Below are positions 17,070 to 55,962 of a DNA stretch of 64,000 nt, piece by piece. The stretch is from Ylistrum balloti (Eukaryota). Both the position numbers and the translations under genes were made by a program. Where the stretch lies: positions 434,001 to 498,000 of the forward strand of contig NW_026782685.1 of NCBI RefSeq assembly GCF_031769215.1. Reading direction: 5' to 3'. Under the pieces are notes generated by a model that had not been told where the DNA came from, did no database searches, and worked only from the letters and a program-made list of their open reading frames with translations. Position 1 is the stretch's first letter. Each line of letters opens with the position of its first letter.

Positions 17070-20000
17070 TCATTGTGTTATAATTCCATCACATTGCTGT
17101 TGACTTTCCTCTTTGAACAGTTTATCATTTTCTGGAGAAATAAATGCTTCAGTAGGATGAGAAACTTGATGGAACACTTCAGACGCCAATCCTAAGACTG
17201 CAGCTATAATTGCTGAAGAACCTGAATGATAAAGTTAAAACTTTATACAAAACTGTTATGCATGTTATGTCAATTAGTCTACTCGAAAATCTGTTTGATT
17301 GAATATTAAAGACATGTTCAGTCTTGCAGATTTCACTGAATTTTATGCTAAATTATATTGAAGTGTATGATCTGAAAATATGAATCATTAAACATTTTTG
17401 TTTTATTTTCTTAATTTTGATATTTGATATTAAATTTAGTACTGCAATGAGGGTTGTCCGTAGGTTATGCAGAATACAGGGAAAAAATATTAGCGAACAT
17501 GCAGTACCTGCTAAAAAGAAGGAAGCTTCATAGGTCCCTCCTGAATCCAATATAAACCCTAAACGATAAGATATTAAATATCACACGAGAGACAAAAGAT
17601 ATAGCAAATAAGTCAAAGCAGTCAAATGCATGGAAACAGATTATACAATATCTGAAATGTTTAAATCGTCACAAGGCACAATAAGATACATTATTTCATA
17701 CAAAACATTTCTGCATCTAAACTTACTATATGTTTTTTTTTGTTTTGTTTATGTAAAAGGTTTTGAATATTATGCTTCCCGAAAATGTCCGCAAAAGGCA
17801 TTTCAGATATCAAATATTGAACAAAGCTTATATCATTCGTGTAGTGATGTATCTTTCCAGTATAATGTTTTGTATCTATAATCAATGCTGACGATGCATT
17901 ATGAATTTAACTCTAGATACAACATAAACAAAAAATTAATTAAAGACCGTCATACAATTGCTTCTTCCTTTCAGAATGTTTTTTGATAGATCCATAATTC
18001 AATACATATTAAATTTCACAACTTGAAGATATCGGTACTAAATAATTACATTTACACTGGTATATTTTTAATTGTGCGTACCAATATTCAAATGAATCAA
18101 ATCGTGACATACATGATGCAACGCCTTTATTGATGTTACATGTTAATGACAAACGCCTTACTCAGAACAGAAATTAAACTCACCAGCTATTGGGGGTCCT
18201 ATCAGGGTCCCTACACCAGTGAATGTCATCTCGATTCCAAACGCTGTTGCTAAATTTTTCAATCCCACTAGATTAGGTGTGATAGTGGCTAATAATACAT
18301 AACAACATCCGGAATACGTTCCTAAAAATGCAGCATAGATGGCTTGTCCAACAAAGTTCGAACCATAAAAAGGAAATAGCATTGTTGATATTCCAAGCAA
18401 TGAAAATGTTCCAAAATAGAGAATTATAGTTGAGATATGTTCTGAATTGCCAGCAAAACCTATAAATAATCTAGATACACAGTTCATTATACCAGTAATG
18501 GACATTAAAAAAGAAGCCTCAAAACCCGATGTACCTCGAGATATTGCAAAATTAGGAAGATGTACATACATCAGATAAATACCTACATGGCTGGAAAAGA
18601 GACTTAAACATATCAGAAAAAATGGTATATTAGCAAATACCTTGACCCTTTCATAAATCCGTTTCTTTTTTGATAAGCTCAGGGAAGACACTGATAAGTT
18701 TATATCAGCCAAATGTCTTTCCACTTTGTAATATTCAAGATAAGAAGGAAAACACAACGCCCCAAATACAGACATATTAAGAGCGATGCCTGCCATTACA
18801 AAGAAAACCCCACAATTTCCATACTGTTCCCTGGCAAGCTGGATCACCGGAGATAGAATGAAAACCCCTACGCCTGCACCACAGGACGCAAATCCAGTTG
18901 CTATGCTTCTCTTTTTCTCGAAATTCAGTCCCACTACAACGATTCCTGTGGTGTAAATAATACCTGATCCACTTCCTGATAAGCAAAACCAAAGTCGCAT
19001 TACATATTTTACACACATTCTGTCTCAACTCCTCTTATATAGGAGAGAAAGTACATGCACATTTAATATCATAAGACATAGTAAACTGAAAAGTTGTTGG
19101 ATTGTTAATTATCGTATTATAACCATAAGATCAAAGTTTAAAAAACAACAGAGTTGTCTACCATAATTTAAAATTGATTAGTCGGTCAACACTAAATTTA
19201 TGATTGTATGTATGTATGGTATGTATGTATGTATGTTTATGGTGTATGGTGTATTATGTTTATGTCTGACCACCATGTTGTCTAGGGAGAAGACTTATAT
19301 AGGCTCTAGCCTGCTGTCGTAAAACGTCCAAATGGAAAATAAACACAGAAGAGAAAGTTATCGTCCATTTCACAACTTAAATTGGTGCAAAACTATGAAT
19401 TAAACTTCGAACCATCAAAGAACATCTTTTACAATATGAAATATCAGAATAATGTTACAGATCGAAAGTTACACAAAGTAAATTGCAGTAAATTAAAAAT
19501 GAAATTACTGGATATTAACAACTGAACGTTTGAAAATATCTAACGAATGTTTCGTTATATGCTAATAACAAGAAATAATGAGTTTAGAATAAAACTGCAA
19601 GACAACCTCAATTTCTTCAGCAATCATTTCTATTTGTCAAAAGCCTACCTGCTACAAATCCGTATACGAGAAATATAAGCGACAAGGACTTCACGAACAC
19701 ACATGCAATCAATCCTGATGTCATAATCACGGATCCAATTAAGAAAGCTGTCCTACATCCCCATCTATTTATAATCCAACTTCCAATCACACCTGAAAGT
19801 AAAATGAAGTACGGCGTATTGTACATAATTAGTAAAGATGTCCTACACCCCTCTGTATTTATGATCCAACTGCCGATCACACCTGAAAGCAGAATGAAGT
19901 ACGGCGTATTGTACATATATTTTTTTAAAAATTATAATATGCTGTAAATTATGTAAAAAGGATAAGAAGCATAGTATCGATTTCATGATTGTTTCAAGGT

Positions 20001-21695
20001 ATGTTCAGATACAGATCACCAGGTGCGAAGTATTTATGATTTTTTATCTGAAGAACATTTCCAAAACGATCTTATTCAAAGCAAACAGAAAATACCAACA
20101 TGTGAACATAATCATAATCGAAACCCAAATTCAAATTGAATAAATCTATATATTTACATATTTTAATGATTTTGGGGCTGCTGCATCCCCCCGGTCATGA
20201 TTTTGACGTTTCTTTAGGTCATTTTGAGCCTCCTAGGCTTCAAAGTTGAAGTCCTTAGCATTAATGACTGGTCCTAGGAGGACGAAACAGCTGTTTGGCT
20301 CTACTGTATCTTACTCTAAATTATAACGAAGGTGATATTCACTTGTCTACAATCTTTAATAAATCTGCACTTACATATCTTTCTACACAGCAAACTCCTA
20401 TCCATGACTGGGAAAATTCCAAAATACTCGACAGAGGAAATAACCTTTTCGGGCGGTTGGAAAAGGAGGCCATTCGGACACGCCGCAGCGGTCCAATACT
20501 AAACAGGGACGAGGGGGACCAAAGAAAAATGTTAGATAGCCGTAGCCTAATTGACTATGGTACATTGTTACCATCTTGTGTATTTTCTGGTCTTTAATTT
20601 GTTTACTATTTCGTCACACAGTTTTTTTAATGCACCATAGGATTATAGTACCACAGAAAAGTTGGTCGATTCCTTACCATCTCGTACACTAAGTACGTTT
20701 CTGCTAGAACGCTACACACTGGACATTTGTCTGATGGAGGTGTCAGTGCCACACTCTAATCTTCTACTGGCTGTGTCATGTTTCTATTTCATCTTCATAC
20801 ATGTCTTTTTAATTTAAGGCTTCCTTTGCACAATGTGTTATCAACCAAGAGAAGTATACTGACATATGGAGTTATATACCTGTAAACTAACACTAACGTA
20901 GCATTGTACTGTACAAGCAGTTAACTCTGTGCACATTTAAACACATTGTCACTTTTGTATCCCAAAGACATTATTGTAAACACGTATACACACAATTACT
21001 TCATTATTTGTTGCATTTTAATTTTGCGGTTTGGCGAAAGCTTCGCAAACAAAATGAAGCAGCACCAGTTATACTGGATTGTCAAGCCCAACGATTTGTT
21101 TCCAATGTCCTACCTCAAAGCATAATGACTTAATTAGAATCTGAAAATGTTTGATATCTGACGCTATATAATGCTTGATATCTGGCCCAGATGTATATCG
21201 CTTGCTGGTAATGACACAGCTGTTTGATCTAAAAATTGAGAGCAGAAATGATGTCCTCAGTGTACAAAGCATTTCAACACATGTTTAATCCACCAAGTAA
21301 TAAAATTGAAATTGAAATAAGAGAACACCATTCAGTTGAATACATCGTGATACAGAGTGAAAATCCTGTATACACGTGACTAAGTGTTAATGTGAGTAGT
21401 GTTTTAACAACATCAAGCTTCTGAATAACAGAGTGAAAATCCTGTATACACATGTAATGCACGTTATTAAGTTTGACTGTGTTAGTGTTGGTTTAACAAT
21501 ACCTGCAGACGACATGAAGAAGATAAAGATTCCACCAGCCCATGATGTAAGCGACACACTTCTGTTGAATCTGTCAAGTAGTGAGACTTGAATGATGCCA
21601 GCTCCGTACAGAATGCTACCATTGAGTCCGTGAATAAAAAACGACGCTACCATGACAACCCAGGACCAACCTTTGTCTGGCCTTGTTAGTCTCAT
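17070..21695 (-). CDS. SLC16/monocarboxylate transporter-like MFS protein (gene A), 5 coding exons, 443 aa
   Basis: Exons are 21695-21503 (193 bp), 19792-19649 (144), 18975-18184 (792), 17558-17508 (51) and 17221-17070 (152). All introns are GT-AG, phase 1, and the total is 1332 bp in frame with a TGA stop. It has the SLC16 N-terminal signature PDKGWSWVV, INRWGCR, NFEKKRSIATG and GPPIAG. Confidence 0.93.
19206..19265. repeat. Imperfect (TATG)n microsatellite in intron 2 of gene A
   Basis: gtatgtatgtatggtatgtatgtatgtatg... Confidence 0.8.
19737..19916 (-). repeat. 90-bp tandem duplication spanning the intron 1/exon 2 acceptor of gene A
   Basis: The two copies are 19737-19826 and 19827-19916, about 87% identical by eye. 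Each contains tacaatacgccgtacttcatt.t.ctttcag|gtgtgat.gg. Confidence 0.93.
20200..20520 (+). mobile_element. Penelope-type fragment: GIY-YIG endonuclease C-terminus preceded by pLTR-like sequence with a decayed hammerhead-like motif
   Basis: The ORF 20295-20597 contains HDWENSKILDRGNNLFGRLEKEAIRTRRSGPILNRDEG, matching the typical PLE endonuclease tail (H.IDW....ILD.E.....R..KEAI.I......NRDEG). The upstream motif at 20255-20300 is described in the findings. It lies antisense in intron 1 of gene A. Confidence 0.7.
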
Positions 21696-23739
21696 GACAT
21701 TGAATTGATGGAAGGCTCGTGTATCACTGGAAGTAAATAAACACAATACGGATGTGAACTTGACATTGGTACATAGCTATGCATGATCTACATTAAATGG
21801 GGTCATTAGACCATGAAATACGTACGTTTTCAAATATAAGACTTTGAATGAATAGTTTTACATTATAAACATATATCGTTATCGATTCGGCACGAATGTC
21901 TGATTGATTCATGCAATATTTATAGGCTTTCCATAATTGTATACAGTTCAAACATGTTCAATATATTCACCTTAATAGTTTGAATATAAAAAATGTATCA
22001 GACATTTAAAACCAATTTTTTTTTCTCAATTATATTGCTTGGAATTTTAGTAAATAATAAAAGAAAGGTTAATATATCTGTAATTATAGTATTTTATACC
22101 TTCATTTTCTTTTGAGGCACTTACAATTACAGTCTACAGACACGCCCTTAATCAAATGTCATGATCTGTCAATCTTTCACCTTGTGAAGGCTACAAAGAC
22201 CGGACATTAGTATAGTATGACATTCGGAGGTATTTTGATGTCCTTTTATTAATTTGCAGTAATGCAAACTGAATTTGTACCAATCGGCCATACGTTTGAA
22301 AAAAGACGTAAACGTATTTGATAGTAATTTATTTTTCCTCCTTACAGGACGAACTGTGCCCCGTGGATGATTGCTCGACTATAATAACACCTAACTTATT
22401 GATTATCGATCTGTACTGGTGATGTTATATACACTACTACAATTAGAAAGAAAACATCAGTTCATTTATACCACAGATAAAAATATCGATCAGACACTGG
22501 TTGATTTATATATCTACATGTTGAAACACTATGTCGACAACTATACCAGGATGAATTTTGTATAATGTATCTTCTTTGAGTCTGGTATAGAGGACTTGCA
22601 AATAAGTCCTGAACCAGAAATAAACTTATCTTATTAAACAATATATCCAGTCGTATTTACGATAATCCTGGTATGTAAGTATACACTTACCTGTGTGATG
22701 TGCGGACAGGTTGTCTTATAACTCGTCAAGCCAGATGATCGTGTTTACCTACAGTAATGTTGTATATATACAAAAGTCTGGTTACTGGGTATGTCCTATA
22801 CGCAACATACCTGATTTACAATGACGAGGTGTCCTTAAAGTACATCGGGCATTTAAATAGAAAATGTTTTCACTAACCATTTGATATGGAAATAAAGGAA
22901 TTCTACGCCTATCATAACGAATGTTAAAACATACATTAAATGAAAATACTGGTTTTAATAGTTGATATTCTAATAAGATTTAACAATTGATAGAAAAATG
23001 GTAATACAGGAGAGAAAGCGTCAAGTCCATCAATGTCTCTATCTATACCGTTTATCTTACAGCACAGTGCATATCTCTCTTCTTAATGCCTCAATGAGCC
23101 TAATTAAAATAATGTGAAAATAACCCTCTTTAACAACTTACTTGCGAGATGAAAGAGGTATTCAGGCGAGCATTTAAATGTGAATTCAATATTATCCAAA
23201 CACACGAACATTTTCTAAACATTTAACAAGCACCTTTATTGGACAGCATTCATATATAAGGACACAGAAGAATAACGACTTTTGAACGAGAAGAAATATG
23301 TGTATTGCTATTTGCACATATCATTATTGAAGCAGCCAATGCTTAAATACTTATAAAGGTAAATATCGCATTTCAGTGACGTCATTTTACATCTGGAAAT
23401 TCGGTAGAGGATCTTTCTGGTGAAGTATTGGGAATCATTTTCTGATACCTTTACAGAGTGTGAATGGTTCGGATATCAGTGTACAAAATTTTTACCGTCT
23501 GTCATCGTTACGTCGGCGTTTTATTTATCTGTTATAATATCACTGATCAATCCACTCTCTCAAGGTTTCAGAAAACCCTACAATTACATTGAAAATATCA
23601 AACGAGAAATGTGAAAGTTATAAAATCATTTTACATAACGAATTGGGTATACTTATCAGGGTCTGTAATCAGTTGAAAAGTACTAGATACGTTTGTTGTC
23701 GAACTGAAAAAATATTCTACGTCATTGCATTGTATGAAG

Positions 23740-26639: not shown

Positions 26640-28190
26640 TTCGTTAGACGTGTAGAACTGGAAAGTTTTGGAATGTGAACTTACAGATTTCTCTGCTAAT
26701 GGTAACCCAACCGCTTCGGTTAGGCGCTGATGACATGGAGCTTTGGAGCCTTCTGTTGTCAGCATCGTCAGGTGGATTCCAACCATCATCGGCCGTTTCG
26801 ACCCCTATTCCACGACGACCTATTGTTGGCGGGTCAGCAGTGGTGATCAATCACTGCTTGCTGTTGTCTGGGCTCTAGTTTGGCTCATCTCGTCTACACC
26901 ATAACCAGCATGATGCTCTCTCAACCCTTTCAGCCAAGGTCTTAATAGCTGCTTTCCTCTTTGCTCCTATCAGTCCCACTTTCTGGAACATCTTCCATAC
27001 TGACTGTGCAGGGAATCCTCTGGCACCGACCTCTACTGGAAACAGCCATGTGTTCCATCCCTTTTGTCTACACTAATCTGCTAGCTCTAGGTATTTGCCA
27101 GCTTTCCTCTCATGTGCTTCATCACACTCTTCTTCCCATGGAACTGTCAGCTCCACCAAGATGACCTTCTGGCGCTGTTGCGACCATATCACAATGTCTG
27201 GTCTCAGAGTGGTATGCACTACATCAGGAAAGACGAGACGCTTGTTGAGGTCTACTCTCATTTCCCAGGATGGTGCTTGGCTGAGTACATTCACACGATA
27301 TGCAGTTGGTCCCTTCTCTCCAGCTCTCACAAACTGTATGTGGGGTTTATGAGGTTCTATCAGTGACCTCTTCTGACGCCGCTCCTTTTCCAGAATATCT
27401 GCTAAGGCAGCTAGAACCTGGTCATAACGCCATCTGTACCATCCCTGCTGGAGGGCTACTCTACAGCCTGATAGGATATGTGCAAGTGTACCTCTTCCAG
27501 CGCACAAGGAACAAGCTGGATCTTCCAGAAGGCCCCACCTACACAAGTTGCTTGGAGATGGCAGTGTGCCATACACAGACCTGAGCATGAAGGATATCCC
27601 GAGAGGTTCCATTTTCCACAAGTCTGTCCATGTAATCTTGCGTTCAGGAAGATTCCACCGCGTCCATGATCCTTGCTGTCCTAACTCAACTGCTCTACTT
27701 TTGCGCTGCTGTTCCTCCTCTAATCTCACCACAGATACAATTCTGTCTCTTTTTTCCTTGCCGTCTGCTTTGCTCCACTGCTGAAAGTGATCGACTTCCA
27801 ATCCTCGTCTACCAACACAGATGTTTCCCACGATGTCTTGCAACTCCAGAGTACTCTCAGCTTTGCTGACTGTAGCAACAGCTGACCATTTCCGACCTGT
27901 CCTTGTGACCACTCCAGCTTTTTGTACCTTGATGTCTTTGGAGTCCTTCAGGGTCATAACCAATCTACACTTGGCCACCTTGAATTCTTCCACCATGGAG
28001 GACAATGGTAATTGCAACTGAGATGTCTTGCTGTAAAGGCCAACCACCGTGAAACTAGGTAGTACTCCCAGCCATGATCGTAGCTTCCTGCTGGTACATC
28101 TCTCCAAGGTTTCAACTGCTGTCAGTGGTAGCTCATACACCATCATGGGTGTAAAATGATGGATTGTAAGGCAGTAAATCAGATCGTTCA
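26640..28190 (-). mobile_element. 5'-truncated RLE-type non-LTR retrotransposon (HERO-like): post-RT region, CCHC knuckle, restriction-like endonuclease, 3' UTR
   Basis: The ORF 28191-27073 has CSLCAGRGTLAHILSGC, YRWRYDQVL, LRPDIVIWS and VILVELTVPWEE. After one in-frame TAG it continues in the same frame (GWNTWLFPVEVGARGF...RASCWLW) to a stop ending at 26875. A 3' UTR follows. Confidence 0.88.
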
Positions 28191-28559
28191 TTCATTCATG
28201 CACATCAAATTAAAAATAATAAATGCAAGAAATGCAAGAAAAACATTTGATCAGTCCGCTGAATGAGAACAAAGAAGAAGGGAAAATATGAAGAAGTTTA
28301 CATCGTTAACAGGTTACGGTGTCGCGTACGCGTTCGCGTGGCGGTTAACACAGGTATTGTAAAGAACGTGGAGATAGCGCAAATAGTGTAATATCGTAGT
28401 CGAGTGTAGTGTTGTCACAATATAATGTATTTAGAGGCGCTACAAAGTCAGATACAGACGAGTCGTTCAGTAGATCCTCAATGAAGATAAGGTAGTATGA
28501 CGTAGACAAGATTGCCCCCTTGTCGCAGTCCACGTTTCATATCAATCCAAAGAGATTTA

Positions 28560-31775: not shown

Positions 31776-33247
31776 ATCAATGCAATAACTTATGTCACTC
31801 TCCAAATGAGAACGAGGTATACAATAAAGGAACCAGCAAGCAAACAAACACCAAACACGTCCAGCTTCATGTCGCCCAAAAATCACCTGTTTAAGGTGTG
31901 GGACCTTATAATGGAAACAATTGAATTGAAATTCCAATCAACTTTTTTTTTGTTTTATTATCTTTAAACATTCTGAATACATGTAGCTTCTCAACATGAT
32001 AATTATATCCATAAGGAAGCAGTACACAATTTCTTCTGAAGGGGCGTCGTTTTCCGGAATATTTTTGGACTGTGTCGGAGAAAGTTAATTGGACAGTCTA
32101 CACATCAAAAACTAGGTTTACAAAAACTGAGATTTCCTCATGGTCCACACGTGTTGATGTGAAGCCGTTCCGAGTTTCAATTTTCTGGAAAATTTAATTT
32201 CTTGTCGTGACAGTGCTGTTATTCTAGACTGGTGTTCTGATTCCTCGTATGGCTGTGCAGTTTTGGGATAAAACTGGTGATATTTTAGCGCATTTTGAGA
32301 TGGTACTCATGGTACCACATGTCAGAATATTCTTGTTTATACATTTCTTGTTCCTTAGCTGCAACTGCAATTATTATGTAGTTCATAAGTAAAGCATTTT
32401 TCGTAATCAGGAAAAATGTAACGAATTGTTCCCTTATACCTATATATTCTATTTCAATTATCGTTGCTCTATGCACTCTTTATTATGTTTATAATGCGAT
32501 TCATTATCTGCTAACCCCAACTTTTCTGACGTATTAACAAAGTAAAACTTACTCTGCCAGCAGATTTCGATATTTTTTTTTACGGAAATATTATTCTATT
32601 GATTCATTTGGCAATAATTAGCTCCGAGTATTGCTGCATTTTTGTAAGGCATTCACATACTATTTACCATGGCAAAGTGGATGGAATTGCTAATTAAACA
32701 AGAAATGGAAAATTTGAAGGGATACAACGAGACTCAGTACGTAGATAAGTGTATGTGGGTCACATTGATATTTATTTAGTGTGTATGTGTCTAGGGAATT
32801 GGAACCATTCCGTTAGGGTACATGATCGATCCGTTCAGTAGTAATGGAGTAATTATATACAGACGTCGGGTGTGTTGTTATATACACCAATGTATTGAGG
32901 TATTCACATGACATAACGGTGAACTGATAACTACTATCACAATATCTTACCTTAGAAACGATAACATTATAAGGTACAATAAGTATTATAAATGTATGTG
33001 AATAGATACAAAAACTTCAATTGATAAGTATCTGGATTACTTTTTCAAGGTAGTTTTACGTAAAACTATGAAATAAAGCGATTATTTCACTTTCGCCGGG
33101 AGGTACGTAAAACTTTTCTTTCATTTTCTAGTTCACTTTTTTGAAATTTCATTATTCATCCGCCGGCTTCAACTATAATTATATACAGGGAACATGTCAC
33201 TTGTTAGAAGTATGCTAGTCAAAATTGAAAATTGTTTTCACTTGAAG

Positions 33248-36200
33248 GGCATAATGGCTAGCGATATCATCAACCTTTACAGTTGCCACGTGGCCTTATT
33301 TACCGGGAGTTAGGTGATGACAGTTGCCGCGTGGCCTTATTTACCCGGAGTTTGGTGATGACAGTTGCCACGTGGCCTTATTTACCCGGAGTTTGGTGAT
33401 GACAGTTGCCACGTGGCCTTATTTACCGGGAGTTTGGTGATGACAGTTGCCGCATGGCCTTATTTAACGGGAGTTTGGTGTTGACAGTTGCCGCGTGGCC
33501 TTATTTACCGGGAGTTTGGTGATGACAGTTGTCGCGTGGCCTAATTTACCGGGAGATTGGTGTTGACAGTTGCCGCGTGGCCTTATTTAGCGGGAGTTTG
33601 GTGATGGCAGTTGCCGCGAGGCCTTATTTAGCGGGAGTTTGGTGATGACAGTTGCCACGTGGCCTTATTTACCCTGAGTTTGATGATGACAGTTATCGCG
33701 TGGCCTTATTTCCCGGGGGTTTGGTGATGACAGTTGCCGCGTGGCCTTATTTACCCTGAGTTTGGTTATGACAGTTGCCGCGTGGCCTTATTTACCGGGG
33801 GTTTGGTGATGACAGTTGTCGCGTGGCCTTATTTACCGGGAGTTTGGTGATGACAGTTGGACTTACTACTTGTTGTGTTGACATATGGAAGATTTGCAGG
33901 TAATGTATACCAACAAGTGTTTGTAGCTTATACTTTGGAATGCGTACACAGACAATTAATAGGGGAAACAATAAAGGTTGTTTGTGATAAATACTTTCGA
34001 ATGACAACTTTTTCCTGATAAAAATGTACATCGGTGGCATAATTGGAAACGATTTTAAACATACATTGTTTCTGTGTTTTGTCTGAAGTAAATATTAAGC
34101 TTTCATTTTGTATACTTTTAAAAGGGGTAAATATATTAGATATGATTTTGCCATGTAAATAATGTCTGTCAGCAACAGTCATCATAACAATACAAATCCT
34201 TAACATTGTTGTTTTCCTAGTACAATATTAGACAACATTTCTTAAAACTGACCAAATGATACAAAAAATTGTAGATAAAATCAGATTAATTTCATTCTGA
34301 TTCTATCGCAAAAAAAAAAGCAAATTAAAAGAACACCATAAATGACTTTGAAAATAAAGTCGATCAATTTACTATATTGTGTATTGTGTGACTGGTAGTG
34401 ATTTATTTGAAAAGTAAATTACATATCTCAGAAAAATACCGTTTAAGATACCTTTTGTTAAAACACAAGCATATTTTTATATGAATTTTATAAATGAAAA
34501 CAACATAAAAATCCATCTGCGTCGCCCTACGATTTGAATATGATATTTCTATTTATATTTTCGCTTACTGATACTGAATATGATTTGAGATCCCATGCTT
34601 CACTGAAGCAGAACATACCAAGATATGTTGCTCTACAGGATAAAAGTCATCAGCGGATTGAAAAGTAAGTCTTATTCTCTTTTTACTTTATCAGGAGTCT
34701 CCGTGTTTTGTTATATTTGAATTTGGATTATGATTATGTTGACATTTTGGTATTTTCTTCTTGTTTTATGTTTAGGAACTAGTTCCGGAATTGTCTTCAT
34801 AGCCGGAGTAGTTGTCAGTGGTTTCAACTTTGAAAAGAAACACAGTTTTACTACTGGATTTGCATTCTGTGGGTCAAGTTTCGGGTATTTATTTTCCCAC
34901 CCTTGATTCATTTGGTAAAGGATACTTATGGCGACAAAGACTTCTTTTTCATCTTCGACGGAATGGCTCTCAGTATATATGTCTTTGAATCATTATGTTT
35001 TCCTTCTCAATTGGAACATCTTAAAATACCAGGTTTTACCGGATGCGAATTGTCAATTTCCGCACCGAGCTTATCATGTGTGAAGAGATGTTATGACATG
35101 GTACGCATGTGTAAAAACATAGGATTTTTGGCTCAGTGTTGATACTTTTTTTGGCCAAATTGGAATCCATATGATGTATGTACATTTGACAAATTACGCC
35201 ATACACTTAGGGTCTTTTAGATTCCAAGCATCGCTCCTTCTCTCCATGACAGAGATTATGTGTTGTATATCCAGGCCTTTAGTTGGGATAGCAGCTAATG
35301 CAGACAATATATCGTCATTCATCCTGTTACTTTGGAACATTTGGAGTCCTTGGTGTGGCAACTGTAATATTTTCGCTTTTTAGAACATCGTACGTCTGTC
35401 AAATTATATCTTCGGCCTCTTTAGGAACATACGCTGGCAGTTGCTGTGTCCTTTTGAGCAATAACGTCATAAATGATGGATGTTCAATATTTAGCTTTAG
35501 CGTGTGGCGTGCAAATGGTTCTTCAATTGGAACTCTGTTAGCAAGTGTGTACTATAGTATTGTAGTACTTCCAATTTTAATTACACGAGTATAGATGCAT
35601 TCCAGATCACAAAACAACAGTGGTAAAAAAAACCAAACCAAAACAAAACAAAACCAAAAAACAAACAGATTTTTTCTTGACCTAATAGACACGATAATGT
35701 TTCATTACCTAAACTATTAATTGAGAAGTCGTCAGATTTATTACAAATGTATCATATTCATGCAATCTAGAGGACAAGTAAGTAGGTATGATGTCATTCC
35801 ACTGATCTATTTACCTATTGATTTAACAAAACACTGACATGTTGTGTACACGGTAATTCAAACCCATTAGCGATGAAACGCGAATACGATATGAATATTT
35901 ATGTGACGCTAGATGCGTTATATTACGAATACTATAGACATGTAATATTGTTTGTTTCTTTAATCCAACCATGTGCGGTGACCAAAACAAATTCAATAAA
36001 ATAAATGAAGTACATAATTATTGACTACCCTATTCATCCATTGCCAATCCCTATAAATAGCTGTTGATAAAAATATGGTTACATATATTATGAAACCGGA
36101 GTCGTTATGCATTGATGATGTTTCATATCTTTAATTCTAAAATTGAATTACTTTTTCTATGTGTTATAGTGGAAAGAGACTGGAAATACGAGACGTTCTG

Positions 36201-44763: not shown

Positions 44764-47700
44764 ATGTCAATTTGTGTTGAGCAATATCGTACAAGAATAG
44801 GTCTTTTTTCCACTGTAACTATGAAACGTATGAACATTAGATCACCAAACGTTATCAACATCTTATTCTATGTATTGTTTTGTATATATATCCATTATAT
44901 ACTTATGTATTTCCTGACCGATATAATACTATACATCACAACAAATAACGTTTTCATAACACATGTAGTATTACGTAATTCCTGTCCAGGTTTTCTTAGA
45001 GAAATTACCAATTTTACCTTCACTCTCTCAGTCTCACTTTTATTGTTGTGAACCCAGGTCCCTCTAACTCTGAACGTTCTAGCTCTGTCACCGACACCTC
45101 GAGTTTTTCGTCTCTTTTATCCGAAGAGTTGCTGAATTCTGACAATAATTTGTCATTTGTTCATTTGAATGTCCAAAGTCTACGACCAAAACTTGACCAT
45201 CTCTTTACTGAATTGTATAACTATGATATCTTGTCGTTTACTGAAACATGGTTGAGCGATACTCAAAATAACAACGATTTAGAATTAACCGGTTTTCAGA
45301 AACCTTTTTGTCGCTATAGGCCAAACAGAATAGGTGGGGGAGTTGCTGTTTATATAAAGAATGACTTATTTGCTAAAAGGCGTAATGATATCGAAGTAGG
45401 TAATCTTGATTGTATTTGGATTGAAATTCTCTATAGAGGGCAGAAGCTACTATTTGGAATTTTTTATAGGTCCCCTAACTCCGATATTAACGACTGGGAC
45501 TTGATTGAGCATTCTATTGACTTTGCTTTTAACACTGGTATTGATGATATTGTTATTACTGGCGACTTTAATTCTAATATGCTACGTCCTAACCCTCACC
45601 GTACTAGACTAGCGAATATTATACAGCTCTATAACATGTTACAGATAATAACTGAACCTACTTTTTATTCTGAACCCAACTCTAGTCTTCTCGATATTAT
45701 CTTAGTAAGTAATGATTCTATTGTTACGCGTTCATACGTAGGTGAACACTTCCTTGAGCAAAATACACGATATCATTGTCCGATATACGGTTTTCTTCAT
45801 GTTAATATATGGTTGTTCAAACATGGTGACTACGTATCATATCGAAGAAAACTTTCTGATGTTTCTTGGGATGAAGTTATTATTCCCAATGACCCAAACG
45901 AATCTTGTAAGAATGTGACAGAAAAAATATTAAGTATCGCTCGCGATTGTATACCCTATAAGTCTGCATTAATAAGACCACTTGACCCGCCTTGGATGTG
46001 CAATAAAATCCGTCGACTCATTCGTAAACGTAAACGATCTTACAAAATTGCCCGTTCTTCAAATTCTCCTTCTGACTGGTTGAAATTTCGACGCTTAAGG
46101 AATAAGAGTGCTAATGCATGTAGAATTGCTAAGAAGAAATACTTGTGTAAACTTACCGCTTCCCTCCGCGACAAAAATAATCTGTATCGAAATTCTTGGT
46201 GGAATACTATCAAATCATTTATAGGCATTTCCAAAAAGTCAAATTCCATTCCTGCTTTATTATGTAACGGTATCCTGTACGTATCAGCTGGTGATAAAGC
46301 TAGGCTATTCAATGATTACTTCACAGCCCTGTATATGATACACACTCCCAAATTCCTCCCAACCAAATTCCTGATAATAAACTTAGTGATATTATTATAA
46401 CTGAAACGGATGTTCAAGATGTCTTATTATCACTTGACACTTCAACAGCTACAGGACCTGACTTGTTGAACCCACGTTTACTTAAAGAAGGTGCCAACGA
46501 ATTAGTCTTACCACTTTGTATTTTATTCAACTCTTCTTTACAACTTGGTATATTTCCTAATTCTTGGAAGATAGCCAATGTAATACCTGTACATAAAAAG
46601 AATGAAAAAAATGATGTTAAAAATTACCGTCCTATTTCTTTACTTAGTATCGTTGGCAAAGTGATGGAAAGGTGTATATTTAAATATGTACATAATTTTC
46701 TAAATGAATATAATTTGATAACAGATTGCCAGTCAGGATTTAGACCAGGGGATTCTACAATTAACCAGCTACTAAATAGAACTAAGGACTTGGGAAGGGC
46801 AATAGATTCTGGGAGGGAAGTACGTATTGTTTTTTGCGATATAAGCAAGGCTTTTGATCGTGTCTGGCACAAAGGTCTTATACATAAACTTGTCAATATT
46901 GGTTTAGATGGTAAAGTAATTTAATGGTTCAAAAACTACTTAACAGATAGAAAACAAAAAGTTATCATTAATGGTGCTGAGTCCTATTTGTCTGATATCA
47001 CGGCGGGAGTTCCTCAAGGGTCAATTTTAGGGCCTCTTTTGTTTCTAATTTTTATTAACGATATACTCGCCGATATTGGGTCTATAATCAAGCTATTTGC
47101 TGATGATACGTCTGTATATGTTATTGTTGATTCACCTTTGTTGGCTGCTGAACGTCTGAATAATGACATGGAGAAAATTTATTTATGGTCCAAAGCTTGG
47201 CTTGTTGATTTTAACCCTCAAAAAACTGAATGTATGATTGTTTCTAGAAAAAGAGATCCCCTTAATCATCCTAACATTTACTTTGATAATACCCCCATAA
47301 CAAATGTAAACTCTCATAGACACTTGGGTGTAACTCTATCTCGCGACTGTAGCTGGACTACTCACGTTGATATTATTATTGGTCAAGTAACATCTAAGCT
47401 TAATATGATACGGAAATTAAAATTTACTCTAGACAGGAAAAGTTTGCAGATTTTATATTTTACCTTTATTAGGCCTGTAATTGAATACGCTGATATTGTC
47501 TGGGATAATTCAAGCAACGAGTATGTAAATAAGCTGGAGAAAATAAATCAGGAGGCTGCCAGAATAATATGTGGGGCTACTAAATTAACTAATATAGATA
47601 AACTGTATATAGATACCGGGTGGGAAACACTAAGCGAAAGAAGGAGAAAACACAAATTAATCCAATTTTTTAAAATGTTTCATGGTAGAACGCCTGAATA

Positions 47701-48259
47701 TCTGTCCTGTCTGGTACCTCCTAACATATCTGACACACATAATTATGGCACAAGACATGGTAACAATTCAATCGGTGTTAGATGTATGTCCGAATTCTAT
47801 TGCCATTCCTTTTTACCCTCAGTGATTACACTTTGGAACAATATTCCTGAGGAAATTGGTAATAATCCCTCACTATTTTCATTCAAAAAGTATCTTAATA
47901 TCAATTCCAGGGGACGTCCGCCTGAATATTATTATGCAGGGTTGAGACTAGACCAAATATACCATACTAGATTACGGCTTGGATGTAGTTCCTTAAAAGG
48001 TCACCTCTTTCGGAGAAACCTAGTTGATAGTCCCATGTGTGCATGTGGATACCCATTTGAAGATAGTTTCCATTTCCTGTTGCAGTGTGCCAATCACTCT
48101 GCCCCAAGACGAAGGTATTTAACCTCGTTGACTTACCATCTTAGTGTTGATTTACTTTTGTTTGGCGATCCACTTTTATCTTATGACCAAAATGTAGAAA
48201 TATTCATAGCTACTCAAAAATTTATAAAATTGAGTGAAAGATTTAGAAATAGTACCTAG
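44764..48259 (+). mobile_element. Near-complete CR1/L2-type LINE ORF2 (hydrophobic leader, degraded 2A-like motif, APE endonuclease, RT, C-terminal Cys/His motif), inactivated
   Basis: The endonuclease has HLNVQSL, FTETWL, GGGVAVY, GDFN and LDIIL. The RT has YRPISLL, QSGFRPG, CDISKAFDRVWH, GVPQGSILGP and LFADD. The C-terminus has CACG...HFLLQC. Lesions are a frameshift at about 45049, a frameshift at about 46330 and an in-frame TAA at 46922-46924. The 3' UTR runs to about 48620, ending aataaagtttaaactaa. Confidence 0.95.
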
Positions 48260-49225: not shown

Positions 49226-51144
49226 AAAATGATCTGAAATAATAGCTCTGGTGTAGTAATACAAATGTTTCCTTTCTATAAACCCGATCTGTAATTCAAC
49301 CTATGACTGTTTGTAAAAATATATCACTAAGGAATATACAGGAGAATTTGTTTTCAAACAATTTTTATTAATAATAATATAAATGTAAATGAAAGTTTAA
49401 TATATCTTCTCCATTTCCAAGTAAATTCTTAAAGGAAACAGAGTTTTTTTTTCTACATACAATGTAGATGTTCACTGATGAAAACAATCTTCATAACATG
49501 TAAGGAATCATGATATATCTGAGAGTGTGGACAACTTGAAAAATATTTCGCCATGAGTGACAAATTTACCTTACACAGAGTTTTAGGTGTTCAACATAAT
49601 ATGTCAAACCCAGCTTTTACGCTTTACAGAACGTCATGCTTTAAAGTTTGAATAAATCGTAATCATAAACACCAAATGTCTATATAAGTCAGTGTAGGAA
49701 ACGCAGCAAACTGATTTTTCTCAAGGAAGCGCAAACAGCATTTCGATAAACCAATATAACACTATGTGTATACATGAATAAATAAATGTAACCAAGCAAA
49801 ACGTCAATGGCTAGTATTAACTATGCAGACGATGAATGTGTTTTAGCAGTCTGTGTAGTGTTTGAATTATTCATAACAAAAATAGGAAAACACCATTGAA
49901 ACACACCTGCCATGAACATCACGGATGGTTTAGTCTGATTTAATAAGCAAAACCTTGACAAACAGACAGGAAGGACATCTCTAGCAAAGATATCCGTCCA
50001 TTATTTCAATATGCAATACGTTTATTATTTTTATTTTATCAATTAGACCACGGATTGTCTTGAATAGAAGTCTACCATGTGTTTATACCTACATTATATA
50101 TGTCAACAGCCACTCGGAAAAACATTTTCATAAATGGAAAAGTGGCAGAATTTTCGAGTCCATATATTGGGATATTTATATGAAAAATGCAGCAATATCT
50201 ATACATAGATTGACACGGTAAGTTGAACTAGTTATTTGTTGGGTTTAAAGATACCCAGCTAAATAGACATGCACTGTGGCTGGATCCTGAAGAATAACCC
50301 AGGCAAGAGGTACAAAGAATGTTTTATATGGAATGTATAGAAAGTATACACACTTACTAGGTATTAGAAGGAAATTTATCATATAAACAGAGGGATACAT
50401 ACATGCTGGCTATCATTAAGGTATCTAAGATAGATTTATCACCAAATGGTTGCTAACGTTATGAGACAAACAGAATCATAACGTATGATTGAAACACCAT
50501 TAAAAGAGCCTTTTCCGAATTTTCATTTTACCGAGCCTTTGGTGAAGTAAAAATTGAAGAAATTACTGATCTTTGTTTTAATTTTTTAATCTTATATGCA
50601 ACGAAAATGATTATAGGACCTTCTATTTGGTTTTTGTTTACTGAATGCATATCATTCACACGCATGTTTGAACAAAAATGAAAATAACTGTATATATATT
50701 CAAGAGTTTTCTGTTTTCTCACATTGTCTTTGATAATTTGTTTCTCGTTAAGACAACACTACCTATTTCTTTAACAGTATCTTGTTCCATTTAAAGCAGG
50801 ATTGTATGGTCCTAGATTCCATCTGTTTCTCCTCTTATTTGCTATTTCTCATCCTTGAAACCTTGATCACTGAAGATAGTGATAACAAAATTAAGGTTAT
50901 TATTTTTTTTAAAAATATTTACTCTCCATAAAGCCATAAAATTTATTTTCATGTTTTGCTGATGTATGTAGAGGTAATTTTTTTTTAATGAAAATTATAT
51001 GCCACAAGCTAAGCCAACCAAGTCAAACCAAGCCAAGCATAACGTATATATGTATATAACACTATGTATGTTACAGGATGTTAAAAGTGACACATTAATG
51101 TGTTGCTGAATATACAACTTTATCCAGGACGGTACGAAGTCATC

Positions 51145-54100
51145 ATGGTTCTCACCAAACCTGACACAGGTTGGTCCTGGGTAGTCATGACAGCAACATT
51201 TTGTATTTTAACCATCCATGGTTTTCTTGTTTATGGGTCTGGCATGGTACAGATAGCTCTGTTCGAAAGATTTCATGATAGTGTGGCCAAAACTTCATTA
51301 GCAGGATCTTTGTTAACGGGATTCTTATCTTGTTCAGGTAAGTATGGTAACGACAAAAATCTGATTTATTGATTAAAAATCAATTTCCATTGGAATTTAA
51401 TTAGGAAAACCTGATTACGCTTATTACGATATTAAAAGATAAAAAGGTTTTAATATTTGTTTTAAGTATTTCCATAGTTGATAAAAGGAGTTATACCGGG
51501 TTGCAATCAGAACACACCTTGTTGAAACCATACCAAATTTTCCTTGATTGAAATTGATGACGTCAAATCTGTTAGATAATGTATAGAACTTGTCATTCTT
51601 TTGCGAACGAAATACTAAGACGTTGCTTCCTTTGTTTTTTTTAGGTATTTTAGACGGGGTGTTAATCAGACGATACAGTTGTCGACAGGTTGCCGTCAGC
51701 GGTGGAATTCTAATGGTTATCGGAATTTTCCTCAGTGCCTTCATGACGTCATTGAGCTGGATAATATTTACCTTTGGTGTTGTTGCAGGTATCTATAACA
51801 TATCAACTGTTTTCAGTCTGTCACCGGAAAAGTTAAAGCGTATCAAACAGACAAAATCATTGTATTATAAGCATGTCATTGCATTCAGAAATTGTTATAT
51901 CTGTGTAGTTTAAACTGTACTTAATTTCCTTATTGAGTATTTGTAATGACGACTGAGACATGTGGCTAGGGACAAGATGACTGTGAAACACTTGTGCTCT
52001 CTTGGCTGGGTCTTTGGGTAAGATGCCTTACCACATATGCTATACATAGCATGAGATGGAGCTCTTGTTCCATGCATGTTGTTTAGCTTCTACAAGGAAG
52101 CATCGCCTCAGAATTGATTTTTCTGTTGGAGGTTCGATAAACCCAGTACTTCAACCTCCACCTTGATGCCTAGATCTTTCGGAAAAGTCGTGCACTCGTT
52201 TAACTTTGAAGGGTCGTCATCTTATGTTTACTTTTTTCATGTTTTTCTTCCAATTTTTCGATATCTTATTTAAAAGATACAGTTTAATTAAATGCTTATA
52301 TTTCTATATATAACATTTGTACATCTGACGTATTAAAGATAGTAGAGGATATCACATTTTCGAAGGAAAGGAAGAATGCCCCAGTAGTACACTTCTTATC
52401 AAATAAGATTCACAAGATGTGCATTTTTGGAGAAGCACGTTAACCTTCCACAACATCATGTCTTATTTTCGTTTGTTTTTTCAGTGGTTTCCCCTCCCCC
52501 TCCCTTTATTTATTATTTGCTCTCTTTTGTCAGTTTTCAGAAAAGTGAAATGACTTACAAGCTAGTGTTTTGTTACTACTTTCCTAAATATTGGTGTCTC
52601 CGATATTGTTTTATATATTTTTGTGGCTTTTAATCAATTTCTTTTTGTTTTTCAGGTTTTGGAGCTGGTATACAATATACATCCATGTACATTACCATTG
52701 GTTACAATTTTAAACGAAATATCAACCTTGCATTAGGCTTCGCTTTATCGGGTTGTGGTATTGGAACTTTCGTCTTTACTCCAGTATTCGCGTATATTAT
52801 GACTGTTTATTCATTAGAAGGAATTTTCATATGTTTAGCAGGTTTATCGTTGCAAAGTATTGTTTTCAGTGTAATGATATTTCCTTCTAGTCTAGAAATG
52901 AAACATAAATCAAATTCTACAAATACACGCAAAGGAACAAACAGTCAAGATACAACTTCGTTTTGTGTGAATATGATAAAATTATTTAAAACAAGATCTT
53001 TTGTAGTCTTACTAATTAGCTTATATATTGCAAATTTTGGAACCTATATAGTCTACATACACTTGGCTAACTATACCACACACAAGGGAAGCACAGAAAT
53101 GGAGGCCGCTTTACTTCTGTCTATAATAGGGTTGTGCTCCTGTGTATCAAGGATATTGGCCGGACTTGCTTGTAATTCGGAAGTCATTGAGGAACCAACA
53201 CTTTTGTTTGGAACTTTGGGAGTAACTGGAGTTTTCACAGTCCTGCTGCCTCTTTACAGTCATACACTTGCAGGACAGATCGTTTTTGCCGTTGCCTTTG
53301 GACTATACGCTGGATGCTTGTACTCCATAATGAATGGTATAACGTTAAGGTTTTTGTCATTAAGTGACCTCGGTAGCGCGGTGGGAATCGAACTCGCCGT
53401 TATAGGAGTTGGTATAATGACTGGTCCTCCTGCTGTAGGTAAGTATAACGCATTCCGTATGTAGAATTTTTGGTTGAACTAGAATTTTACTCGTTGAAGA
53501 TTTCAGCGTGGGCAAATATTGACCGAGACTAAAATTCAGATAGAAAATTAATTGCAGTAAACTAAAAGCATGTGAAAGGAGGATTGTGGTATAGAGGTAT
53601 TACGTAATTATAATGATGGACATTTGAATTATTTATGCCTTCTTTACTTTTTGTTCCTCGAAAGCTTCATCATTTCGAAATCTTTTCGTAAAATACTCTT
53701 CTGTACGTTTTGTTGTGATAGATATCATCCAGGATTTTTAAACTACATTCTATACGCAAAACAGTGTAACCACTTAAAATAGTTAACATATAACCATCCT
53801 TCAAAATATATCATATTTAACAGAAATAAAGTTAATTGGTGCAAATAAAACATCTCTAGGTGCATTGTAAATTGAAACCCAGAACAACTATTTTATTGAA
53901 TTATTTCTATTCTCTTGAACAAGCACTGCTTACATTGTTAGAATTTGTATTTATCTACCCGCAAATAATAAACCAATTTATTTTTAATTAATTAATCTCA
54001 TCTTTAAATATCTTTCAAAGAATTTAATTCATGTTTAAACAAAATATGGGTATAACAGGTTTGTTTCACACACGCAAATGTCCCATTTATGGACCGAAAT

Positions 54101-55131
54101 CTCATTTCAGTCTTGCCATACTTTCGCTTTTGAAGAGGAAAACAGTAACATGTAGTTCTCTTCTTTTTGTATTTAATTTTATCAGTTTAACTTAGACGGT
54201 GACGAAACAAAAATCATTATATTTTCTTTTTGCAGGCTATATTATGGACTCGACAGGAAACTATGACATTGGCATTGTCATAGCAGGTAAGTTCCTCAGT
54301 TTTGTATATATAACAACTCTATGTAAAGATCTGTTTATGCATAATCCTGTCCAAAATTTCCACATAACTATTTACTTTATTAGAAAGATATCACATTGAT
54401 TGAGCTTTTGAGTGTTTATATGAAGTCTCTCATTTCATTTCTATTCCCATACTTTTGAGAGAGTATAACTGGAAAAAGACCTAACTTGCTATACATCACA
54501 ACCTTCACCTTGAGGTGATCAAATGCGAGGTCCTGGTTAGCCTGTGAAGTCAGTTTCTCGCGTGCCATCTTAGGGAAGGCATTCGGAAAAAACATGAATA
54601 TACCTTATTCATTTTAACTGCTTTTGACCTATAACGATAACTGACATCAGTTCCTTGCATGACCGGGTTCTTCTTTACTGCCCTCTATGGTATGTTCTTT
54701 TTCATCGTTTGCACTACTAGATTTGCTATTTATTTTAATGTTCTTTTATGTTCGACCTACTTTATAGATTAAAGTACGAGGTTCGTCTTTGTCATGGTTG
54801 AGTGCTTACATTTTCCCGTCAGAGAAAACTTTAGTATAAGTAGATTGTGATTAGTACCTGTCATATCTTTCGTCAGGTATTCCATACACAATGCACAGTT
54901 AAGATTGGTTGGTATTTTTATTTACATTTGGATAATTATAGTAATCATGAATCACGTCTCGTTTGTTCAATTCTAGGTTTGTGCATAATAGCAGGAGCCA
55001 TTTTGACACTGATAGCAGAACTTTGTAATAATAAGAAAAAGAAAAGAGACGAGACTAAATGTGATGGCGAGTTTACAATATCACTGACCGAGGATGTATT
55101 GGAGAAACTGAAGGAGGAATGTGAACAATGA
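51145..55131 (+). CDS. SLC16/monocarboxylate transporter-like MFS protein (gene B), 5 coding exons, 441 aa
   Basis: Exons are 51145-51337 (193 bp), 51645-51788 (144), 52656-53438 (783), 54236-54286 (51) and 54977-55131 (155). Introns are GT-AG, phase 1, and the total is 1326 bp in frame. It has PDTGWSWVV, RRYSCRQV, NFKRNINLALG and GPPAVG. Confidence 0.93.
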
Positions 55132-55165: not shown

Positions 55166-55962
55166 CTGACAAAATGCTAGAGGTATTTCGGAAGTGAAGT
55201 TATACTTCATTTATCGACAAAGCTAGAGGTATCTCAGTAGTGAATTTATACTTCATATAACGACAAAGCTAGAGGTATCTCGGTAATGAATTTATACTTC
55301 ATATAACGACAAAGCTAGAGGTATCTCGGCAGTGAATTTATACTTCATATATCGCCAAGCTAGAGGTATCGCGGTAGTGAATTTATACATCATACATCGA
55401 CAAAGCTAGAGGTATCACGGAAGTGAAATTTTAAACATCATATATGGACAAAGCCAGAGGTATCTTGAAAGTGAATTTATACTTCATATATTGACAAAGT
55501 CAGAGGTATCTCGGTAGTGAATTTATACTTTATATAACGACAAAGCCAGAGGTATCTCGGTAGTGAACTTATACTTCATATATCGACAAACCTAGAGGTA
55601 TCTCGGTAGTGAATTTATATTTCATAAATCGACAAAGCCAGAGGTGTCTCGGTAGTGAACTTATACTTAATATATCGACAAAGCCAGAGGTATCTCGGTA
55701 GTGAATTTATATTTCATATATCGACAAAGCTAGAGGTATCTCGGTAGTGAATTTATACTCCATATAACGACAAAGGTAGAGGTATCCCGGTAGTGAATGT
55801 ATATTTCATAAATCGACAAAGCTAGAGGTATCTCGGTAGTGAATGTATATTTCATAAATCGACAAAGGTAGAGGTATCCCGGTAGTGAATGTATATTTCA
55901 TAAATCGACAAAGCTAGAGGTATCTCGGTAGTGAATGTATATTTCATAAATCGACAAAGCTA
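55166..55962 (+). repeat. 46-bp minisatellite, about 17 copies, starting 35 nt after the gene B stop codon
   Basis: The unit is cgacaaagctagaggtatctcggtagtgaatttatacttcatatat. Confidence 0.96.

What the first reader, a model, noticed from the sequence alone, without database searches (positions are those of the whole stretch)
33248..33899. A minisatellite born from coding sequence: exon 2 of the MCT pseudogene amplified 14-fold between two ACAGTTG microhomologies
Seen: the flanks read GIMASDIINLY-SCHVALFTGSLVM-TVGLTTC...YGRFAG|gt, collinear with gene A exon 2 (GVIGSWIINRWGCRTAFLIGSVIMTSGLIAC...YGFVAG|gt). The 41-bp unit is the segment encoding SCHVALFTGSLVM. It is bounded by the 7-mer ACAGTTG, which occurs in both tACAGTTGc (Y-S-C) and ACAGTTGga (T-V-G). 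The 13 extra units add 533 bp, which is not a multiple of 3. The first unit has an in-frame TAG, and about 26 bp are missing downstream. Inference: microhomology-seeded duplication followed by unequal exchange. The ancestral single-copy state can be read from the paralogue, which is a rare, clear record of minisatellite origin and possibly the event that killed the gene.
Basis: partly seen in the sequence, partly recalled or inferred. Interest (0 to 1): 0.75.

Follow-up and report, generated by a model that had tools for sequence, protein, structure and literature searches.

The report
Minisatellite grown from a dead exon
In a scallop (Ylistrum balloti) a 41-base piece of exon 2 of a long-dead transporter gene copy has been multiplied 14 times on the spot, starting at a 7-base direct repeat; it is a clean textbook example of how minisatellites are born, not a new kind of element.

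Summary
At 33279-33859 there are 14 full 41-bp units plus a terminal ACAGTTG. The unit occurs nowhere else in the 648-Mb genome.

Collapsed to one unit, the stretch aligns without gaps to exon 2 of three intact MCT-like (MFS) paralogues: A, B, and a closer one, C, on another contig. That gives 15/31, 10/31 and 14/31 residues (z 8.3, 6.2, 7.5). A GT donor follows. An exon-3 remnant with at least 3 frameshifts lies 0.9 kb downstream.

So the array is coding-derived, grew in place and sits in a real pseudogene. A 7-nt remainder after a blunt duplication has p = 6e-4. This fits the known birth models (Haber & Louis 1998; Taylor & Breden 2000).

Contigs from four other samples carry the same junctions, unit variants and frameshifts. 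No one-copy allele was seen.

Not supported: that the array killed the gene. The pseudogene branch is 7-10 times longer than those of its intact relatives and seems to predate the split of scallop genera. The units differ by only 9%, and the edge units are barely diverged.

Other notes of this scan report exon-derived minisatellites elsewhere in this genome. Two other arrays in this window are also unique to their own locus.

Verdict: real, neat, ordinary in kind.

The parts
33248..33278 (+). Left part of the exon-2 remnant of the MCT-like pseudogene (GIMASDIINL, first base of Y). The AG before it (33246-33247) is 1 nt out of register with the phase-1 acceptor of the paralogues.
33279..33852 (+). 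14 full 41-bp units. The consensus encodes SCRVALFTGSLVM when read in the exon frame. Mean pairwise difference is 9.4%.
33279..33285 (+). First ACAGTTG (codons Y-S-C). Gene B has the identical TACAGTTGT at the homologous site. In four other samples base 33283 is G.
33311..33313 (+). In-frame TAG, private to unit 1 (T>A at unit position 34). Also present in the other samples' left-flank contig.
33853..33859 (+). Terminal ACAGTTG (codons T-V-G). It is the incomplete 15th unit, the 7-nt remainder of the array.
33853..33899 (+). Right part of the exon-2 remnant: TVGLTTC, then a 26-nt deficit at 33874-33883, then YGRFAG. GT donor at 33900-33901.
34775..35594 (+). Exon-3 remnant of the same pseudogene, after a TTTAG acceptor. 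It reads in four frame pieces (34775-34885, 34888-35139, 35171-35326, 35328-35594), which means at least 3 frameshifts plus stops. E 1e-34 to paralogue C and 2e-33 to gene A. The same sequence, without indels, is in four other samples.
19647..19793 (-). Exon 2 of intact paralogue A (annotated monocarboxylate transporter 9-like, P0006), used as a single-copy comparison.
51644..51790 (+). Exon 2 of intact paralogue B, a single-copy comparison that keeps TACAGTTGT.

Best explanation
A third MCT-like (SLC16-type MFS) gene copy lies between genes A and B of the scallop Ylistrum balloti and is a long-dead pseudogene. Inside its exon-2 remnant, a 41-bp stretch that once encoded the segment S-C-R-V-A-L-F-T-G-S-L-V-M was duplicated in place. 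The most likely cause is replication slippage or unequal exchange between two ACAGTTG 7-mers lying 41 bp apart. Once two copies existed, ordinary minisatellite dynamics (slippage or unequal exchange, sometimes two units at a time) raised the number to 14. The array has no function. It is neutral DNA whose progenitor can still be recognised because intact paralogues keep the single-copy state.

Shown: the array, its uniqueness in the genome, its coding origin, the collinearity with one unit, the 7-nt remainder, the pseudogene lesions, and presence in other individuals.

Inferred: the slippage or exchange mechanism, and that the array arose after the gene was already dead.
For: Array and units.

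Unique in the 648-Mb genome: DNA search; 35-nt pattern, up to 3 mismatches; 11 hits, all in this array.

Coding origin. With one unit the remnant aligns ungapped to exon 2 of A, B and C at 15/31, 10/31 and 14/31 residues, z 8.3, 6.2 and 7.5, and 0 of 20,000 shuffles reach the score. The unit alone matches C at 8/13 (SCRVALFTGSLVM against SCRVAFIVGSVIM). C-R to M spans 12 codons in all four sequences. Gene B keeps TACAGTTGT.

Context. GT donor at 33900. The exon-3 remnant lies 0.9 kb downstream on the same strand, E 2e-33. The paralogues carry PF07690 and are annotated as monocarboxylate transporters.

Microhomology. A remainder of 7 nt or more after a blunt 41-nt duplication has p = 6e-4 over 53,374 sites of this window. 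It matches the models summarised in PMC3389668.

Later exchange. Variants are shared two units apart: u5/u7, u10/u12, u11/u13.

Real, not an artefact. Contigs of 4 other samples from 2 studies, about 1% diverged, hold both junctions, internal unit variants in the same order, and the exon-3 frameshifts.

Old pseudogene. Branch 1.24 against 0.05-0.17 for the intact members of its own clade; placed outside the Ylistrum/Pecten/Mizuhopecten C group (support 86/82).
Against: No one-copy allele or orthologue was seen, so the progenitor is inferred from paralogues that share only about 50% of nucleotides in this exon.

The GTT in the second 7-mer is absent from all paralogues. The full 7-nt homology may have been completed after the first duplication by conversion at the array edge.

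Copy number in other individuals could not be measured, because short-read contigs break inside the array.

The argument that the array came after the gene's death assumes that homogenisation has not erased older divergence among the units.

The tree placement of the pseudogene is on a long branch with moderate support.
Confidence: 0.8

Rival explanations
1. The first 41-bp duplication was itself the inactivating frameshift of a then working transporter gene. All other lesions came later, and the units look young only because exchange keeps them alike.
For: +41 nt shifts the frame. The TAG in unit 1 is a private, later change. Concerted evolution of tandem arrays is well known (for example PMC3087553).
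Against: The edge units, which homogenisation normally leaves out, differ from the consensus at only 2 and 1 of 41 positions. The pseudogene branch is 7-10 times longer than those of its intact nearest relatives. The locus also carries at least 3 frameshifts, stops and a 26-nt deletion, and has lost exon 1.
Confidence: 0.15
2. The first duplication was blunt or used only 3-4 nt of homology (ACA..G). The full 7-nt match arose afterwards by conversion or repair spreading from the array into the flank.
For: Gene A has ACA-TCA-G and paralogue C has ACT-TCA-G at the second site, so only 3-4 of its 7 bases are shared with paralogues. The neighbouring 90-bp duplication in gene A has a remainder of only 1 nt, so blunt duplications do occur here.
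Against: A 7-nt remainder is rare by chance (p = 6e-4). Half of all nucleotides differ between the pseudogene and its paralogues in this exon, so a lineage-specific GTT is unremarkable.
Confidence: 0.15
3. The array is a dispersed or transposon-borne satellite that landed in, or only resembles, an exon.
For: Many minisatellites come from mobile elements (PMC3389668). Other notes of this scan describe such families in this genome.
Against: There is no other copy in 648 Mb. There is no foreign sequence at the junctions. Unit plus flanks are collinear with exon 2 of three paralogues.
Confidence: 0.02
4. Assembly artefact, or a chance resemblance of the flanks to exon 2.
For: Tandem arrays are often misassembled. 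BLAST E-values for the short flanks alone are only 6e-4 and 1e-3.
Against: Independent contigs from four other samples reproduce the junctions and the order of units. Ungapped z scores are 6-8. The position, strand and GT donor fit the exon-3 remnant downstream.
Confidence: 0.02

Closest known systems
Minisatellite birth between short flanking direct repeats (Haber & Louis 1998, Genomics 48:132; as summarised in PMC3389668)
   Same: A unique stretch flanked by a 5-10 bp direct repeat is duplicated by slippage or unequal crossing-over. Here the repeat is 7 bp, the period is 41 bp, and the array ends in the bare 7-mer.
   Different: The progenitor is not observed directly. It is inferred from paralogous exons. 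The host is a dead exon in a mollusc, not a yeast or human gene.
[quoted passage not shown]
   Same: It predicts that the terminal repeat unit is incomplete, which is seen here (7 of 41 nt).
   Different: That model was built on a fish mitochondrial control region where alleles before and after the event were seen. Here no one-copy allele was found, and no pause-prone hairpin is predicted.
'Mirages': minisatellite-like tandem duplications of exon-intron boundaries in amphioxus (PMC3087553). Other notes of this scan report them in this scallop.
   Same: Gene-derived, locus-specific tandem repeats built from exon sequence. They seem frequent in this genome. The 90-bp duplication in neighbouring gene A is of the mirage type.
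   Different: The 41-bp unit lies wholly inside the exon and contains no splice site, so it is not a mirage by definition. It sits in a pseudogene.
Transposon-derived minisatellites (PMC3389668)
   Same: Unit size and array size are in the same range.
   Different: The unit is unique in the genome and derives from host coding sequence.

Membership tests
Minisatellite born by slippage or unequal exchange between short direct repeats | Head-to-tail array with a unit of about 10-100 bp | tested here: met
   41 bp x 14.2 copies, 90% matches, no indels
Minisatellite born by slippage or unequal exchange between short direct repeats | The array ends in an incomplete unit equal to a 5-10 bp direct repeat that also begins the unit | tested here: met
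   581 = 14 x 41 + 7; ACAGTTG at 33279 and at 33853; p = 6e-4 under blunt duplication
Minisatellite born by slippage or unequal exchange between short direct repeats | The single-copy progenitor carries both short repeats at the unit's spacing | tested here: inconclusive
   No one-copy allele in four other samples. No orthologue within the 10-kb flanks of the Pecten and Mizuhopecten loci. The paralogues give the right spacing (12 codons). The first 7-mer is identical in gene B. The second shares only 3-4 of 7 bases with A and C.
Minisatellite born by slippage or unequal exchange between short direct repeats | Locus-specific, not part of a dispersed element | tested here: met
Minisatellite born by slippage or unequal exchange between short direct repeats | Copy number varies between individuals (VNTR) | tested here: inconclusive
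   Short-read contigs break inside the array. Unit-level SNPs are seen but length is not measurable.
Pseudogene of an SLC16/MCT-like MFS transporter | Significant similarity to family members over several exons, in the right order and on one strand | tested here: met
   Exon 3: E 2e-33 to A and 1e-34 to C. Exon 2: z 6-8. The paralogues carry PF07690 and are annotated as monocarboxylate transporters.
Pseudogene of an SLC16/MCT-like MFS transporter | Disabling lesions that are real, not sequencing errors | tested here: met
   At least 3 frameshifts and stops in exon 3, a 26-nt deletion, the array with stops in every frame, and no exon 1 in the window. The same exon-3 sequence without indels is in four other samples.
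Pseudogene of an SLC16/MCT-like MFS transporter | Not expressed as a functional mRNA | not tested
   No RNA run was listed for this stretch.
Mirage (tandem duplication spanning an exon-intron boundary) | The unit contains a splice junction | tested here: not met
   The unit lies 31 nt after the acceptor and 40 nt before the donor. Definition taken from PMC3087553.
Transposon-borne or dispersed satellite | Copies of the unit at other loci | tested here: not met

The most novel reading that the evidence does not exclude
The first 41-bp slip was the mutation that inactivated a working transporter gene, and continuing exchange has kept the units young-looking. The locus would then be a datable birth of a minisatellite with a known coding progenitor. 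Together with the independent 90-bp duplication that overlaps the homologous C-R-x-A-F segment of neighbouring gene A, it would mark exon 2 of this gene family as a recurrent duplication hotspot.
Probability: 0.12. Interest if true: 0.45.

Novelty: new member of a known kind. Interest (0 to 1): 0.3.

Why it matters
It is a clean teaching example of how a minisatellite starts. The progenitor sequence, the short direct repeat at the edges and the later multi-unit growth can all be read from one locus and its paralogues. It adds to the impression, from other notes of this scan and from two other arrays in this window, that this scallop genome readily turns unique and even genic DNA into tandem arrays. 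It does not change what is known about the mechanism, and the array has no evident effect on a living gene.

Tried and rejected
1. Dispersed repeat family: rejected. Whole-genome DNA and pattern searches find only this array.

2. Hairpin or pause-driven slippage: the unit and its neighbourhood fold no better than shuffles as single-stranded DNA (z 0.0 to 1.0).

3. Gapped DNA alignment of the collapsed exon to the paralogues is unreliable at about 50% identity. It was replaced by ungapped, codon-anchored comparison with permutation.

4. Looking for a one-copy allele: contigs of four other samples show no joint that skips units. Contigs cannot prove absence.

5. Looking for an intact or one-copy orthologue:
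- No annotated protein of Pecten, Mizuhopecten or oyster is closer to the pseudogene than the A/C clade, at about 35-62% per piece.
- The 10-kb flanks of the Pecten maximus gene-A orthologue (L018) and of a Mizuhopecten relative (L020) hold no remnant. The tool cannot reach further out. In Ylistrum the pseudogene lies 11.5 kb from gene A.
- P0005 (isoform X2) was not on record. P0028 lies 25 Mb away on the same chromosome.

6. Exon 1 of the pseudogene was not found anywhere in the window.

7. 533 - 26 = 507 = 3 x 169, so both ends of the exon remnant are in one frame today. There are several stops in that frame, so this is taken as a 1-in-3 coincidence.

8. The costly representative-protein search and structure prediction were not used. 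The proteins are plainly MFS/MCT-like.

Full report
**What is there.**
- The stretch 33279-33859 is a tandem array of period 41, 14.2 copies, 90% matches and no indels.
- Written out in register, it is 14 full units (33279-33852) followed by the first seven bases of a 15th, ACAGTTG, at 33853-33859; 581 = 14 x 41 + 7.
- Eleven units match the consensus with at most three mismatches, where shuffles give none.
  - the left flank reads GIMASDIINLY;
  - unit 1 carries an in-frame TAG at 33311-33313;
  - the last unit and right flank read SCRVALFTGSLVM-TVGLTTC;
  - YGRFAG ends at 33899 and GT follows;
  - 13 x 41 = 533;
  - 26 nt are missing between the Cys codon and the YG codons, compared with the paralogues.

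**Organism and gene family.**
- The product of gene A (17073-21746, minus strand) is 100% identical to a protein annotated 'monocarboxylate transporter 9-like [Ylistrum balloti]' (P0006).
- A closer paralogue on contig C926, called C here, is P0001 of the same scallop.
- Exon 3 of A and of B hits Pfam MFS_1.
- The window therefore holds two intact MCT-like genes: A on the minus strand and B at 51100-55131 on the plus strand. A third, broken copy lies between them.

**Is the middle copy a pseudogene? Yes.**
- 0.9 kb downstream of the array, after a TTTAG acceptor at 34774, lies an exon-3 remnant (34775-35594). It matches exon 3 of A at E 2e-33 and of C at 1e-34.
- It can only be read in four frame pieces, with stops between them. 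That means at least three frameshifts.
- No exon-1 remnant is detectable anywhere in the window.
- Contigs from four other samples (two studies, about 1% SNP divergence) cover 34739-35621 without any indel. The frameshifts are therefore real and shared.

**Is the unit coding sequence of exon 2? Yes.**
- If the array is collapsed to exactly one unit, the first 31 codons align without any gap to exon 2 of A, B and C.
- The collapse was done only inside a script, for alignment.
- The scores:

| Paralogue | Identical residues | BLOSUM62 z against residue shuffles |
|---|---|---|
| A | 15/31 | 8.3 |
| B | 10/31 | 6.2 |
| C | 14/31 | 7.5 |

- None of 20,000 shuffles reaches the observed score. No other stop-free 31-residue window in the six-frame translation of the 64-kb window scores as high, apart from the genes themselves.
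- The unit alone is SCRVALFTGSLVM against SCRVAFIVGSVIM in C (8/13).
- From C-R to M there are 12 codons in all four sequences, so one unit is the ancestral length.
- At the DNA level gene B keeps TACAGTTGT at the site of the first 7-mer.
- The consensus unit has the Arg codon CGC, as all paralogues have Arg. The His (CAC) in units 1, 3, 4 and 10 is a CpG-type transition.
Both were tested and neither is met.

**Is it a dispersed repeat? No.**
- The 652-bp stretch and a 35-nt core of the unit (up to three mismatches) occur only in this array in the 648-Mb assembly.
- The exon-3 remnant is also single-copy at the DNA level.

**How it most likely arose.**
- Slippage and unequal exchange add or remove whole units. 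The remainder of an array therefore preserves the length of the homology used in the first event.
- For a blunt duplication of a 41-nt segment at 53,374 non-repeat sites of this window, a remainder of 7 nt or more occurs at a frequency of 6e-4.
[quoted passage not shown] I could not open the original Taylor & Breden paper.
- Later growth involved multi-unit steps. Private variants are shared two units apart: u5/u7 A39T, u10/u12 G27C plus G28T, u11/u13 A30G.
- No hairpin or unusual fold of the unit is predicted.
- One caveat. Of the second 7-mer, ACA and the final G match gene A (ACA-TCA-G; C has ACT-TCA-G), but the middle GTT matches none of the paralogues (TCA in A and C, ATC in B). Either the pseudogene lineage had Val there before the slip, or conversion from the array extended a 3-4 nt homology afterwards. 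I put about 15% on the second.

**Did the array kill the gene? The evidence leans against it.**
- For the tree the pseudogene pieces were joined with X at each break, inside a script only.
- The pseudogene falls in the A/C clade (support 99/98), as sister to the C group of Ylistrum, Pecten and Mizuhopecten (86/82).
- Its terminal branch is 1.24 changes per site, against 0.05-0.17 for the intact A and C genes.
- That points to a copy older than the split of these scallop genera, with a long period of decay. The long branch makes the exact placement unsure.
- By contrast the units differ pairwise by 9.4% and from their consensus by 5.2%. The two edge units, which array homogenisation normally leaves behind (PMC3087553), differ from the consensus at only 2 and 1 of 41 positions.
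- The array is nevertheless older than present polymorphism. It is in all five genomes sampled, with flanks about 1% diverged.
- The simplest reading is death first, array later.

**Other individuals and species.**
- In all four runs, the left-flank contig runs from unique DNA to 33342 and the right-flank contig starts at 33830 (33903 in X5).
- Internal pieces reproduce the reference order of unit variants with 0-4 differences.
- No joint that skips units was reported, but short-read contigs can show neither copy number nor rare alleles.
- All four runs have G at 33283, so their first 7-mer reads ACAGGTG. Gene B shows that T is ancestral.
- No intact or one-copy orthologue could be retrieved:
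  - annotated proteins of other bivalves are no closer to the pseudogene than the A/C clade;
  - the 10-kb flanks obtainable around the Pecten maximus gene-A orthologue and a Mizuhopecten relative hold no remnant.
- In Ylistrum the pseudogene starts 11.5 kb from gene A, so this blank says little.

**Comparison with what is known, and novelty.**
- The mechanism is the published one. The class, a locus-specific minisatellite grown from unique DNA, is known.
- Other AI notes of this scan, which I did not check, report many exon-derived arrays ('mirages') in this same scallop. Mirages are defined as spanning an exon-intron boundary (PMC3087553).
- The 41-bp unit contains no splice site, so it is not a mirage. 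The 90-bp duplication in neighbouring gene A is of that type.
- The two other large arrays of this window that I tested are also unique to their own locus. In-place array birth therefore seems routine here.
- What is pleasing about this case is only that intact paralogues let one read the pre-duplication state.
- I rate it a new member of a known kind, with modest interest.

**Housekeeping.**
- The N run at 1124-1300 was left alone.
- Spliced or joined models were never sent to a search tool. Searches used single exons by reference.

Noticed in passing
window 19737-19917 (-): Exon 2 of gene A has its own 90-bp x 2.0 tandem duplication, covering the splice acceptor plus the first 55 nt of the exon. 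It is in frame and has a remainder of only 1 nt. Its far edge falls in codons F-L-I, inside the stretch homologous to the pseudogene's 41-bp unit. The annotated protein P0006 uses the second acceptor. The Pecten maximus locus shows a single exon-2 match.
   Followed up: partly
window 55176-55962 and 60637-62634: The 46-bp x 17 and 36-bp x 55 minisatellites are each unique to their own locus in the 648-Mb genome. By the repeat finder's boundaries, the 46-bp array and the 51-bp array at 2290-3623 have remainders of 5 and 8 nt, the same small-remainder signature. The boundaries were not checked by hand.
   Followed up: partly
L018 (Pecten maximus LR736849.1, gene-A orthologue); proteins P0005 and P0027: The annotated isoform X2 of the Pecten orthologue of gene A skips exon 2 altogether (SSAG joined to TGSGIIF). 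Exon 2 would therefore be optional in at least one prediction.
   Followed up: no
window 34694-34807: The stretch just upstream of the exon-3 remnant attracts thousands of short contigs, with summed depth of 40,000-85,000 in all four runs. It is a high-copy or low-complexity sequence next to the old acceptor.
   Followed up: no
window 27073-28191 (-) and 45048-48259 (+): Long open reading frames that look like retroelement genes: a 372-aa ORF between gene A and the pseudogene, and 450-aa plus 423-aa ORFs typical of a LINE between the pseudogene and gene B. They may explain the lost exon 1 and the wide spacing. They were not scanned against family libraries.
   Followed up: no
window 33248-33899: Array gain (533) minus the downstream deletion (26) is 507 = 3 x 169, so the start and end of the exon remnant are in one frame today. 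There are several stops in that frame, so this is taken as coincidence.
   Followed up: yes
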